Shown in pieces: positions 21,401 to 24,400 of a DNA stretch of 64,000 nt (positions are counted from its first letter, which is position 1; each line of letters opens with the position of its first letter). Source of the stretch: Paragordius varius (taxonomy: Eukaryota; Animalia; Nematomorpha); assembly GCA_964247055.1 (NCBI GenBank), contig OZ176059.1, positions 434,001-498,000 on the forward strand. The letters are read 5' to 3'. Made by a program: the position numbers and the translations under genes. The notes under the pieces were generated by a model. It saw nothing but the letters and a program-made list of their open reading frames with translations. It did not search any database and was not told where the DNA came from.

Positions 21401-24400
21401 TATACCAGCCCTGATACCATTTACAGTTTAATTTCACCCTTCAATTCAAGTTTACCCTTGAACAATCCATATTCATTTTCGAACAATGCAAATTCACCCT
21501 AAAATAAAATATGTGTTTTTTAAGATTAAATACCTATGTTTTTTATTTTATTAAAAAAAGAAATTTTGTATGTAATTAGAATAATACTGAAAAAATAATA
21601 TTGCGATAAAAATATATTTAATTTTAATGATGAGTTATATTAGAATTTCATAATTTATTTTTAGGATGAATGTGAATTGTTTAAAGGTGAATTTGAATTG
21701 TAAATGGTATACCTCTTTATTTAAAATATTTTACATAATTAATGTTTTAACATTAACTTTCATTTATATTGTAAAATATGGGAGAGACGGAAAAAATTCC
21801 AATAAAAATATTAAGTCTGACTAGCATAAAATTTAAATTACAACAAACACTTTCGAAAAAATAATGTTTCAGATAAATTAAATAAAATAATTACTTACTA
21901 AGCGGTGATCAAATTGACCTCATCGATTATCCCACTCTGTGTATAATTAAAGTTAGAGAAAAAAACATTCTCGAAAATTATAATTATTTGACCCAATTTT
22001 TGTCTTAATGGCCCTTATCTTAATAAAACATTTTAGTCTAGCGTTTTTCATAAAAAATAAACGATGATACGAATTATTAAACTGATATATCATGGAGGTT
22101 GTGGAAACTATGTTAAATTTAATTGGTTATAAATAATTAATTGATAACAACATAATATGGAGATTATTATTATTCGTCTTTCATTACAATTACAAATCTA
22201 AGTATTTACTTCCTATCGAACAATTGGTGGCTTTGTGAAACGAAAATTTTTAAGATGACAGTGCTTAATCTAAATACAATCGGTTGACCTCTCCGAGTAA
22301 GCTATCTGTTTTTTTCGCCAACTATAATTGGTATCTTAATATACTCAATATACATATTTTACCCACTGTTCATTATGTGTGACTGATGAGTCCACAACAA
22401 GGACGAAACGCGTCTCGCACTATGAAACGTGGTATAAACTGTCACTTTAAAAATTTCCGTCTCATAAAGCCACCAATTGCTCGATAGGAAGTATAACATG
22501 CAATGGTAGGCTAATAATTATCATCTCCATATTATGTTATTATTAATGAAATAGATGGCGTTTGCCGCGAAAATATATGTGAAATTTAATAAATTGATGG
22601 CTAAAATATGTATGATTTTTGAATCGTATAGTGGAAGGTGTAAGAGGAAGGGAAAGAGGGCGCCCTAAAACGCGATGGATAGATACGGTTAAATTAAAAG
22701 ACAAATATCTTTTTCAAAAGACAACCCCATGCCTTTTTAAACCTCAATTTTTCTCTATTAATGATTTAATTAAAATTAAATTAATTGATTGCGTTACCAA
22801 TATACGTCTCTACTTTATACTTTGCAATTATAAACAATGGTTTATATCTTAAAATAAGATTTAGAATATGGTTGTCCTTTGAAAAAAATTTTGTTTTTAT
22901 ATTTTCACGTTTTATCCGTATAATTTTAATTTTTACTGTATTATTAATGTTGATATTACTGAGTTGCATGTTGGGCACAGTTTTTATCAGTTATGAAACA
23001 GTTAAGTAAATTTTTACGGGTTTGATGTGATTGAATGTTAAAAGTGTTTTATTTTCTATTTGCTTAATAAACCAAACGTTCTATTAAATACCTTATATTC
23101 AAATTATTTGGGAAAAATTAGGGTTCAAAAAAGTACGGGGTTGTCTTTTGCAAAAAAAATATTTGTCGTTATCTTTCTACGTTTTGTACGTTTAATTACA
23201 TTTTTTACCATATAAAAAAAATAAATATTTTTTTCCTGTACCATAGATTTAATTTTTTGGAGGGAAAACCTGCTAATAATTTCGATAGCTTTACAGTGGC
23301 ACTCCTGACTGTATTTCAGGTCAGCATATATATATATATATATATATATATATATATAGTAGCGTATGGCATAAAACAACATTAGTACATAAAAGTATAA
23401 ATTATGGATATGTGTATATACAACTATTGTTTATTCAAAAAAATATTTTTTATTCTTTTATGGACTAATAATGTTTTATGCCATATGCTACTGTATATAT
23501 CTTGTGATTAATATTTTATGATATATTATGGATTAAAAGCAGATGATGTTACAAATTATTTAAAGGAAAAAAATGTGATTTATATTGAGATATATATATA
23601 ATACATATATAGATTTTAACTGGCGAAGATTGGAATGAAATTATGTACAATGGTATACAATCTCAGGGCGGAGTTAAGGAAGGCGGCATGATATATGCCA
23701 TATTTTTCATAATTCTCACCCTGTTTGGCAATTGTAAGAATCCACTATTATCAATCATATTTCAGTTGATTAATGAATGATTATTAATTTTAAATGAATG
23801 GAGTGGGAAAATAGTAAAAAACATAGCTAATAAGGTCCTTTAATTTGTCTTTTATACATAAAAAGGGTATATACATCCTACAACGCCCTTTTCACCCTTT
23901 AACTGCGATAAAATATGGTGTGAGTAAAAGTATACTTTTTTGTTTTTTATTTAACACTCCATTACCTTTTTGGGTAGTTTTATATCCCACAGAAATATCC
24001 TTAAAAGTAATTAAGGTATTGAGCCGAATTGAAGAATATGCTTTCTTTAGCCTTTTAAGCTTATTATGCAAAAAAATAAATTTTAAAAAATGCAAAATAG
24101 TAAAAAAATCCTCATCTCAAACTTTTCCCCGCCATTTTTTTCTCTAAATTTTTTAAATCGCTAATGCAACAGGCATAAAATATATTTTATGGTTAAAAAA
24201 TGTGAATAATTAATTTTAAAGATAAAATCTACATTTTACCAGCCAAAACTTGACATATTTTGATTTTTAATATCAGCTGTTCGTTTCAATCGTGTTATAG
24301 AAGCTGTCCCAAATTTAGACTCTAGAAGTCACAAAGCCTTAAAAATAATAATCTAATTTGATAAATTTTAACTAAATTTTTTTTTAAAATTGTAGTTTAT

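What the first reader, a model, noticed from the sequence alone, without database searches (positions are those of the whole stretch)
22377..22420. Complete hammerhead ribozyme in the sense strand of a Cav2 calcium-channel intron
Seen: every catalytic element is present in order. Stem I is GTGTGA/TCGCAC, followed by the CUGAUGA core, stem II GTCC/GGAC with a 7-nt loop, GAAA and a GUC cleavage triplet (cut after 22414). Stem III is reduced to the palindrome ACGCGT. Established: such minimal type I hammerheads with a palindromic stem III are typical of Penelope-like retroelements and retrozymes in animals, and usually cleave efficiently only as dimers. Inference: it lies in intron 15 (20496-23246) in the transcribed orientation, so every Cav2 pre-mRNA carries it. 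It could cut nascent RNA co-transcriptionally, tune splicing or expression, or release a small RNA. Dependence on dimerisation could explain why an essential gene tolerates it.
Basis: partly seen in the sequence, partly recalled or inferred. Interest (0 to 1): 0.9.

Follow-up and report, generated by a model that had tools for sequence, protein, structure and literature searches.

The report
Transposon-borne hammerhead ribozyme in Cav2 intron
The hammerhead ribozyme motif is real and lies in the sense strand of a Cav2 calcium-channel intron. It is one old copy of a roughly 90-member Penelope-like mobile-element family scattered over this genome, so it is most likely an ordinary transposon passenger and not a channel regulator.

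Summary
Observation confirmed. Window 22377-22420 (+) holds a complete type I hammerhead:
- stem I GUGUGA/UCGCAC
- CUGAUGA core
- stem II GUCC/GGAC with loop ACAACAA
- GAAA
- palindrome ACGCGU
- GUC, with the cut after C22414

It lies in the sense strand of a verified GT..AG intron (20496-23246) of a Cav2 gene.

Rfam gives only a sub-threshold hammerhead match (HH9, 33 bits against a gathering score of 52, E 1.6e-6).

The motif is not a host invention. It is the best-conserved part of a dispersed repeat family: 38 exact cores in the 110-Mb genome, and 87 with at most one mismatch against 2 in the control.

The window copy is a composite of about 450 bp:
- an inverted 5'-truncated copy (about 22144-22262, no ribozyme)
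- a forward copy (22263-22592) ending in a ~45-nt tail
- a flanking AATTGAT duplication

Inverted truncated partner, optional tail and partial tandems are the published insertion signature of Penelope-like elements.

The copy is old. Its arms are about 84% complementary and the extended stem I has decayed. It is the only hammerhead in the gene, so it has no partner in cis for the dimer that its one-pair helix III needs.

No RNA data were available, so a role in Cav2 expression is untested and unlikely. The scan holds 29 notes matching 'hammerhead ribozyme Penelope'; the eight shown all describe hammerhead-bearing elements elsewhere in this genome.

The parts
22377..22420 (+). Type I hammerhead ribozyme motif (stem I open). 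Predicted cut between C22414 and U22415.
   Evidence: Sequence. Rfam HH9 alignment at 33 bits, E 1.6e-6. Chance expectation 0.01 per window.
22383..22389 (+). Catalytic box CUGAUGA (C3-A9).
   Evidence: These columns are among the best conserved in 59 family copies: A27 and A30 invariant, five others at least 90%.
22390..22404 (+). Helix II GUCC/GGAC with the 7-nt loop ACAACAA.
   Evidence: Paired in 91% of cells in the family. One copy shows a compensatory C-G to U-A change.
22405..22413 (+). GAAA box followed by helix III, reduced to the palindrome ACGCGU (22408-22413).
   Evidence: Monomer closure of A15.1-U16.1 raises the energy from -10.6 to -4.9 kcal/mol. A palindromic helix III is the published hallmark of dimer-dependent metazoan hammerheads (PMC4209133).
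22363..22442 (+). Conserved ribozyme domain: the hammerhead plus an extended stem I with an internal loop.
   Evidence: Family column identity is 0.93-1.00 here against 0.68-0.83 in the flanks. MFE -23.9 kcal/mol, z -2.85. In the window copy 3 of the 8 consensus outer pairs are broken.
22263..22592 (+). Forward copy of the repeat unit. It is 5'-truncated by about 50-60 nt relative to full units elsewhere.
   Evidence: Matches at 72-77% identity to more than 30 loci. Aligned to the L019 unit.
22546..22592 (+). ~45-nt 'tail' extension, present at only one end of the composite.
   Evidence: Family copies show two classes of 3' end, short and tailed. In head-to-head pairs one arm is short and the other tailed. 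The PLE tail signature is described in PMC8557442 and PMC11167929.
22144..22262 (-). Inverted 5'-truncated copy holding only the 3' part of the unit, without a hammerhead. Its outer boundary is uncertain between 22134 and 22146.
   Evidence: Inverted repeats I1 (56 nt, 89%) and I3 (55 nt, 80%) pair it with 22438-22553. It aligns to the reverse complement of the 3' part of L019.
22139..22145 (.). Left copy of the probable 7-bp target-site duplication AATTGAT.
   Evidence: The same heptamer abuts both ends. Other composites have TSDs of 7 bp (L002, L005) and 13 bp (L014).
22592..22598 (.). Right copy of the probable target-site duplication AATTGAT.
20496..23246 (+). Host intron (GT..AG, 2751 nt) of the Cav2 gene that contains the insertion.

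Best explanation
The motif is the self-cleaving ribozyme of a short (about 330-410 bp), ORF-less retroelement family that inserts in the manner of Penelope-like elements (PLEs). In that sense it is a non-autonomous PLE or retrozyme-type element.

One composite insertion landed long ago in intron 15 of the Cav2 gene in sense orientation. It consists of an inverted 5'-truncated copy plus a forward copy with a tail, about 450 bp in all, flanked by AATTGAT.

The ribozyme's job belongs to the element: processing element transcripts, most efficiently when two hammerheads pair through the ACGCGU palindrome to build a 6-bp helix III.

In the Cav2 pre-mRNA it is a lone monomer with an unstable helix III and a partly decayed extended stem I, held in the loop of a roughly 120-bp imperfect hairpin. 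It therefore probably cleaves rarely or not at all and is removed with the intron.

Shown: the motif, the family, the insertion anatomy, the intron and the strand.
Inferred: mobilisation by PLE enzymes, weak monomer activity, neutrality for Cav2.
For: Family:
- 122 DNA matches to the 521-nt query.
- 38 exact cores against 0 in the control.
- 87 cores with at most one mismatch against 2 in the control.

Conservation peaks on the ribozyme in all copies. This fits selection in the source elements.

PLE insertion signature:
- At least 13 hammerhead pairs are all in divergent (-,+) orientation, with spacing that varies from 101 to 578 bp.
- Palindromic composites are 91-97% self-complementary.
- Partial tandems with a 412-bp period occur in L005 and L019.
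- Copies end either short or with a ~45-nt tail, asymmetrically within a composite.
- L014 has a 13-bp TSD and the window copy a 7-bp TSD.
- All of this matches the descriptions in PMC8557442 and PMC11167929.

EN+ PLEs with 758-788-aa RT/GIY-YIG frames, themselves in inverted pairs, exist in this genome. A PLE 3' fragment carries a minimal hammerhead.

Helix III is unstable as a monomer. Dimer dependence of such motifs is published (PMC4209133, PMC7229834).

There is only one hammerhead in the gene.

A 2026 preprint derives animal retrozymes from PLE pLTRs (10.64898/2026.07.22.740005).
Against: - No DNA similarity was found between the family and the autonomous PLE loci examined, so the mobilising partner is not identified.
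- No head-to-tail dimers with two intact cores at 385-445 bp spacing were found. The tandem-array definition of non-LTR retrozymes is therefore not met for this subfamily.
- No RNA evidence of any kind.
- The 32-nt catalytic core of this old copy has no change. With about 8% decay per arm, my arithmetic gives a chance of about 0.07 for that. This is a weak hint of constraint that I cannot exclude.
Confidence: 0.8

Rival explanations
1. Domesticated intronic ribozyme: the host keeps the hammerhead to cut nascent Cav2 pre-mRNA and so tune splicing, isoform choice or dosage. This is what has been proposed for the amniote intronic hammerheads HH9 and HH10.
For: - Sense orientation in an intron of an essential, highly regulated gene.
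- The catalytic core is intact although the composite's arms have diverged to about 84%.
- The best Rfam match is the intronic HH9 model.
- There is precedent in amniotes (PMC6155905).
Against: - It is one of roughly 90 family copies with the same core, so its intactness is not locus-specific.
- Two changes in stem I and three broken pairs in the extended stem fit neutral decay.
- There is no partner for dimerisation within the gene.
- Conservation across species could not be tested, because the genome has no relatives in the tools.
- Slow intronic hammerheads do not impair splicing in reporter systems (PMC2995048, citing Dye et al. 2006). Even some cleavage need not regulate anything.
Confidence: 0.07
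2. Hairpin RNA source: the functional consequence lies in the roughly 120-bp inverted arms that flank the ribozyme, not in the ribozyme. In the intron RNA these arms form a long duplex that could feed siRNA or editing pathways against the family.
For: - Arms 22207-22262/22438-22493 are 89% complementary and arms 22134-22188/22499-22553 are 80%.
- The 461-nt fold has MFE -146.7 kcal/mol and z -9.8.
- The scan's own note s1-285227 describes the same foldback.
Against: - No small-RNA or RNA data are available.
- The inverted arm is the by-product expected of PLE-type insertion, and it varies in length between copies.
- The mismatches lower the quality of the duplex.
Confidence: 0.08
3. Foldback or MITE-type DNA transposon that happens to carry a hammerhead and moves by a transposase that recognises its terminal inverted repeats.
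For: The composite has long inverted termini and a short flanking duplication.
Against: - The inner junction between the arms differs from copy to copy. Hammerhead spacing is 101-578 bp, and some left arms lack the ribozyme.
- The ends are asymmetric, with a tail on one side only.
- Partial head-to-tail tandems occur.
- TSD length varies from 7 to 13 bp.
- These are features of reverse-transcription-based PLE insertion, not of cut-and-paste transposition.
Confidence: 0.03
4. Chance resemblance to the hammerhead consensus in AT-rich intron DNA.
For: No Rfam family reaches its gathering score. No significant covariation was found within the family.
Against: - 0.01 expected per window.
- Genome-wide, 38 matches against 0 and 87 against 2 in the controls.
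- Covariance-model E-value 1.6e-6.
- All three helices and all core boxes are in the canonical order.
Confidence: 0.01

Closest known systems
Canonical metazoan type I hammerheads of non-LTR retrozymes and SINE-like elements (Schistosoma Sm-alpha, newt satellite 2, coral/mussel/axolotl retrozymes; PMC7229834, PMC4209133)
   Same: - Type I topology, 6-bp helix I and 4-bp helix II.
- Helix III of one pair capped by a small palindromic loop.
- An AT-rich, ORF-less unit of 300-400 bp.
- Dispersed monomers are also known (10.64898/2026.07.22.740005).
   Different: - No head-to-tail arrays with two or more ribozymes were found for this subfamily.
- Copies are mostly inverted composites.
- circRNA expression is untested.
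Penelope-like elements and their pLTR hammerheads (PMC8557442, PMC11167929, PMC4209133)
   Same: - Inverted 5'-truncated copy at the 5' side.
- Partial tandem (pLTR).
- An optional tail at one end (~45 nt here; 30-40 bp in the published descriptions).
- Variable TSD.
- A hammerhead inside the repeat.
- Autonomous EN+ PLEs are present in the same genome.
   Different: - The element has no RT/GIY-YIG ORF.
- It has no detectable sequence similarity to the PLE loci examined.
- Its ribozyme is the canonical type with loops. The PLE fragment seen here (L045) carries the minimal type instead.
Rfam RF02275 Hammerhead_HH9 and HH10, the amniote intronic hammerheads (RECK, CTCL; PMC6155905)
   Same: - Sense-strand intronic type I hammerhead.
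- Similar stem I internal loop and loop 2.
- HH9 is the best-scoring Rfam model.
- Both are thought to descend from retroelement ribozymes.
   Different: - It scores 33 bits, below the gathering score of 52.
- Helix III lacks the 3-bp stem and loop of HH9.
- It is a multicopy family, not a single ultraconserved locus.
- No cross-species conservation has been shown.

Membership tests
Hammerhead ribozyme, type I | Conserved core C3-U4-G5-A6-N7-G8-A9, G12-A13-A14, A15.1-U16.1 and H17, in the canonical order. | tested here: met
   CUGAUGA 22383-22389, GAA 22405-22407, A22408/U22413, C22414. Aligned by the Infernal HH9 model.
Hammerhead ribozyme, type I | Three helices around the core, with helix I open-ended. 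| tested here: met
   Helix I has 6 bp and helix II 4 bp. Helix III is only one or two pairs and a palindrome. The helices are paired in 91-97% of cells across 59 copies.
Hammerhead ribozyme, type I | Covariation supporting the helices. | tested here: inconclusive
   The family is too uniform. Observed values equal the shuffled ones, and only 4 cells show double changes.
Hammerhead ribozyme, type I | Site-specific self-cleavage that gives 2',3'-cyclic phosphate and 5'-OH ends. | not testable with these tools
   No RNA runs are available. It needs in vitro transcription.
Rfam RF02275 Hammerhead_HH9 | Score at or above the curated gathering threshold (52 bits). | tested here: not met
   33 bits here. 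The best genome-wide family copy reaches 38.4 bits.
Non-LTR retrozyme (Cervera and de la Pena 2020) | Short (about 170-400 bp) ORF-less unit with a canonical type I hammerhead and low GC. | tested here: met
   Unit of about 330-412 bp with no ORF, in a window of about 27% GC.
Non-LTR retrozyme (Cervera and de la Pena 2020) | Head-to-tail tandem repeats with two or more ribozymes. | tested here: not met
   There is a single ribozyme at this locus. No pair of intact cores lies at 385-445 bp spacing in the genome. Only partial tandems of about 1.15 units were seen.
Non-LTR retrozyme (Cervera and de la Pena 2020) | Expression as self-processed linear and circular RNA. | not testable with these tools
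   No RNA run holds the region.
Penelope-like element insertion (non-autonomous) | Inverted 5'-truncated copy directly upstream of the forward copy. | tested here: met
   Window about 22144-22262 against 22438-22553. At least 13 divergent pairs were found elsewhere and none convergent.
Penelope-like element insertion (non-autonomous) | Optional 30-40-bp tail at one end only. | tested here: met
   A ~45-nt extension at 22546-22592. Family copies end either short or tailed. The published definition is in PMC8557442 and PMC11167929.
Penelope-like element insertion (non-autonomous) | Partial tandem (pseudo-LTR). | tested here: inconclusive
   Present in family members L005 and L019. Absent from the window copy, whose forward unit is 5'-truncated.
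Penelope-like element insertion (non-autonomous) | Sequence relationship to an autonomous RT/GIY-YIG element, usually at the 3' end. | tested here: not met
   EN+ PLE loci exist, but blastn at word size 7 finds no convincing similarity to the unit. Only 14 PLE loci were examined.

The most novel reading that the evidence does not exclude
The lone sense-strand hammerhead is active in vivo. It would fold as a monomer aided by its loop contacts, or pair in trans with transcripts of the other roughly 90 copies. It would then sever a fraction of nascent Cav2 pre-mRNA. That would couple expression of a presynaptic calcium channel to the transcriptional activity of a retroelement family, or release a stable structured intronic RNA.
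Probability: 0.05. Interest if true: 0.65.

Novelty: new member of a known kind. Interest (0 to 1): 0.22.

Why it matters
As it stands this is routine repeat annotation: a hammerhead-bearing Penelope-type insertion in an intron.

It has modest value in two ways.

First, the family gives an invertebrate example in which a canonical, retrozyme-type hammerhead travels in elements that carry the full PLE insertion signature: an inverted truncated partner, a tail and a pLTR. This is in line with the recent proposal that animal retrozymes are non-autonomous PLE derivatives.

Second, a single sense-strand copy inside an essential neuronal gene is a natural test of whether dimer-dependent hammerheads are silent as monomers in vivo.

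If the ribozyme did cut Cav2 pre-mRNA, it would be a new invertebrate case of ribozyme-linked gene control. Nothing here supports that.

Tried and rejected
1. Rfam at gathering thresholds over the whole window gave no hit. Only the E-value mode showed the hammerhead clan.
2. RNA evidence. The single run search found no RNA holder. The runs laid were DNA-like contigs of the same organism or did not cover the intron, so starts, ends and expression could not be read. The G-to-A difference at 22417 seen in many contigs simply reflects the other family copies.
3. Covariation within 59 copies was no better than the shuffles.
4. Link to autonomous PLEs. No similarity or shared hammerhead was found in 14 GIY-YIG loci. 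None of the listed GIY-YIG hits lies within 10 kb of a family copy.
5. Head-to-tail dimers with two intact cores: none.
6. Arrival of the composite inside a LINE.
   - The right flank 22626-22692 is a LINE ORF C-terminal fragment, also present next to the L014 copy.
   - The left flank shows no LINE homology (462 of 500 shuffles score as well).
   - The inner junctions of the two composites differ.
   - I therefore read these as independent insertions, with site preference or coincidence unresolved.
7. A second hammerhead in the same transcript: none in the window. The nearest same-strand copy is about 72 kb downstream on the contig, past the end of the gene.
8. Literature search for the exact core sequence: nothing relevant.

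Full report
**1. The observation**

Reading the window confirms each element at the stated coordinates:
- 22377-22382: GUGUGA, stem I 5' strand
- 22383-22389: CUGAUGA
- 22390-22393 / 22401-22404: GUCC/GGAC around the loop ACAACAA
- 22405-22408: GAAA
- 22408-22413: the palindrome ACGCGU
- 22414: C17
- 22415-22420: UCGCAC, pairing with the 5' strand as six pairs including one G-U

The pattern CTGATGA-N(6-36)-CGAAAC is expected 0.01 times in a shuffled window. The 32-nt core never appears in shuffles.

Infernal finds nothing at Rfam gathering scores. In E-value mode the region matches the hammerhead clan, best with HH9 (33 bits, gathering 52, E 1.6e-6, full-length alignment). Two further clan models overlap it. 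The shortfall comes from the missing helix III stem-loop. So the motif is a hammerhead by sequence and architecture, but it is not a member of the curated HH9 family.

**2. The gene context**

The + strand carries a Cav2-type channel gene. Exon pieces include the pore-loop and S6 motifs (..[14 protein letters not shown]....[19 protein letters not shown]..). The last exon ends ..EEDDWC at about 53594.

The donor GA|GTAATA lies at 20495/20496 and the acceptor CATAG|A at 23246/23247. Together they give an in-frame junction. The ribozyme is therefore in the sense strand of a 2751-nt intron, as claimed. It is the only hammerhead in the window, and hence in the gene.

**3. What it belongs to**

A 521-nt query around the motif finds 122 matching stretches at 66-85% identity on all large contigs of the 110-Mb genome.

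The core with GUC occurs 38 times exactly, against 0 for the control. It occurs 87 times with at most one mismatch, against 2 for the control. The HH9 model picks up the same places at 30-38 bits.

In an alignment of 32 copies, column identity is 0.93-1.00 over 22363-22442 and falls to 0.68-0.83 on either side. The ribozyme domain, including an extended stem I with an internal loop, is the selected part of the family as a whole. Within the family there is too little variation for covariation statistics. A few single-sided, pair-preserving changes occur, and one C-G to U-A double change in helix II.

**4. Anatomy of the insertion**

The window copy is a composite.
- The forward unit runs 22263-22592.
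- Directly upstream lies an inverted copy of only its 3' part, about 22144-22262. It pairs with 22438-22553 at 89% and 80% in two blocks.

Elsewhere the same family forms head-to-head composites with two outward-facing hammerheads:
- At least 13 pairs are all in (-,+) order.
- Their spacing varies from 101 to 578 bp.
- Self-complementarity is 91-97%.

Some members (L005, L019) show a partial head-to-tail tandem with a 412-bp period.

Copies end in one of two ways. Some end at ..ATGTTAAATAT. Others carry about 45 more bases. Within a composite one arm is short and the other tailed. In the window the tail is 22546-22592.

Composites are flanked by short duplications: 13 bp in L014, 7 bp in L002 and L005, and AATTGAT at 22139-22145 and 22592-22598 here.

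An inverted 5'-truncated partner, a pseudo-LTR partial tandem and a 30-40-bp tail at one end are exactly the structural signature described for Penelope-like elements (PMC8557442). The tail has been traced to two adjacent internal reverse-transcription start sites (PMC11167929). The element has no ORF, so it is non-autonomous.

The genome does hold EN+ PLEs. GIY-YIG matches lie next to 758-788-aa open frames, themselves in inverted pairs. One PLE 3' fragment carries a minimal hammerhead of the published PLE type. However, I found no sequence similarity between these loci and the family. The mobilising enzyme is therefore inferred, not shown.

**5. How it most likely works**

For metazoan type I hammerheads with a helix III of one or two pairs and a palindromic loop, efficient cleavage needs two ribozymes that build a joint helix III. 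Monomers are slow or inactive (PMC4209133). In axolotl retrozymes, monomers gave 6-22% cleavage per hour while dimers were efficient (PMC7229834).

Here, closing the A15.1-U16.1 pair in the monomer costs about 5.7 kcal/mol. The minimum-energy monomer fold pairs part of the catalytic box instead. The element's ribozyme presumably trims element transcripts.

In the Cav2 pre-mRNA it stands alone. The nearest same-strand copy lies about 72 kb downstream on the contig, past the end of the gene.

This copy is also old:
- Its arms have diverged to about 84%, against 91-97% in other composites.
- It has two changes in stem I, both pair-preserving.
- Three of the eight consensus pairs of the extended stem I are broken.

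The 32-nt core is unchanged. At about 8% decay per arm that has a chance of roughly 0.07 by my arithmetic. This is not significant.

In the intron RNA the arms would form a long imperfect hairpin (MFE -146.7 kcal/mol, z -9.8) with the ribozyme in its loop.

Even if some cleavage occurred, reporter work indicates that a slow hammerhead in an intron leaves splicing intact (PMC2995048, reporting Dye et al. 2006). That alone would explain tolerance by an essential gene.

**6. Comparison and novelty**

The closest known things are:
- the canonical type I hammerheads of animal non-LTR retrozymes and SINE-like elements
- the PLE insertion architecture
- the amniote intronic hammerheads HH9 and HH10, for the intronic setting

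It fails the tandem-array criterion of retrozymes and the HH9 score threshold. It meets the PLE structural criteria except for an identified autonomous relative.

A 2026 preprint argues that animal retrozymes are non-autonomous PLE derivatives, and that they are under-represented in introns in frogs (10.64898/2026.07.22.740005). This family fits the first point.

The scan's index holds 29 notes matching the words 'hammerhead ribozyme Penelope'. The eight it showed all describe hammerhead-bearing retroelements on other pieces of this same genome, including one in another gene's intron. Those notes are unchecked, but they agree with my counts.

**7. Limits**

- No RNA run was available. The laid runs were DNA-like contigs, so expression, cleavage and circular forms are untested.
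- The genome has no relatives in the tools, so conservation of the orthologous locus is untested.
- The organism was not identified.

**Verdict**

The motif is real and correctly described. It is an ordinary, old copy of a Penelope-type hammerhead retroelement that happens to lie in the sense strand of a Cav2 intron. A regulatory role is possible but unsupported.

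Noticed in passing
window 22626-22693 (+): Fragment of a LINE ORF C-terminus (..[17 protein letters not shown]) about 35 bp after the element. The 44-nt core of this fragment recurs at 93% identity at 40 or more places in the genome. The L014 family copy sits in the same LINE region with a 13-bp TSD, which may mean a preferred target or may be coincidence.
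   Followed up: partly
window 22688-23160: Nested inverted repeats (22705-22762/23103-23160 and 22688-26/22870-908) of another abundant short repeat (MITE-like). The same repeat occurs at 20526-21304 in this intron and in L014. Much of intron 15 is made of repeats.
   Followed up: no
L045 (G000:C5:6760767-6763904), about 758-782 (-) and 2113-2136 (+): An inverted pair of Penelope-like GIY-YIG 3' fragments. Each is followed about 270 nt downstream by a minimal hammerhead, CUGAUGA-U-GCC-UAU-GGC-GAAAAUUU. This is the PLE-type ribozyme, distinct from the canonical type in the window.
   Followed up: partly
L049 (G000:C1:4910500-4920400) and L050 (G000:C6:302500-312400): Apparently intact Penelope-like ORFs (788 and 758 aa, RT plus C-terminal GIY-YIG) in head-to-head inverted pairs with 98-99.8% identical arms. 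This suggests recent PLE activity in this genome.
   Followed up: partly
window 52563-53594 (+) and 61312-62679 (+): The last Cav2 exon ends with the ..DDWC motif typical of Cav2 channels. A serpin-like gene in two exon pieces follows about 8 kb downstream.
   Followed up: no
L031-L036 (for example G000:C2:5641672, C6:7863491, C10:2883824): A subfamily with loop 2 ACAAAAA and a different, mutually near-identical 3' region (..CCAGAATTGAATAGATTTAAAGCTGG..). It may be a younger lineage of the same hammerhead element.
   Followed up: no
window 23320-23365: A (TA)n microsatellite directly after the exon that follows intron 15. The reads tool skipped it as a repeat.
   Followed up: no
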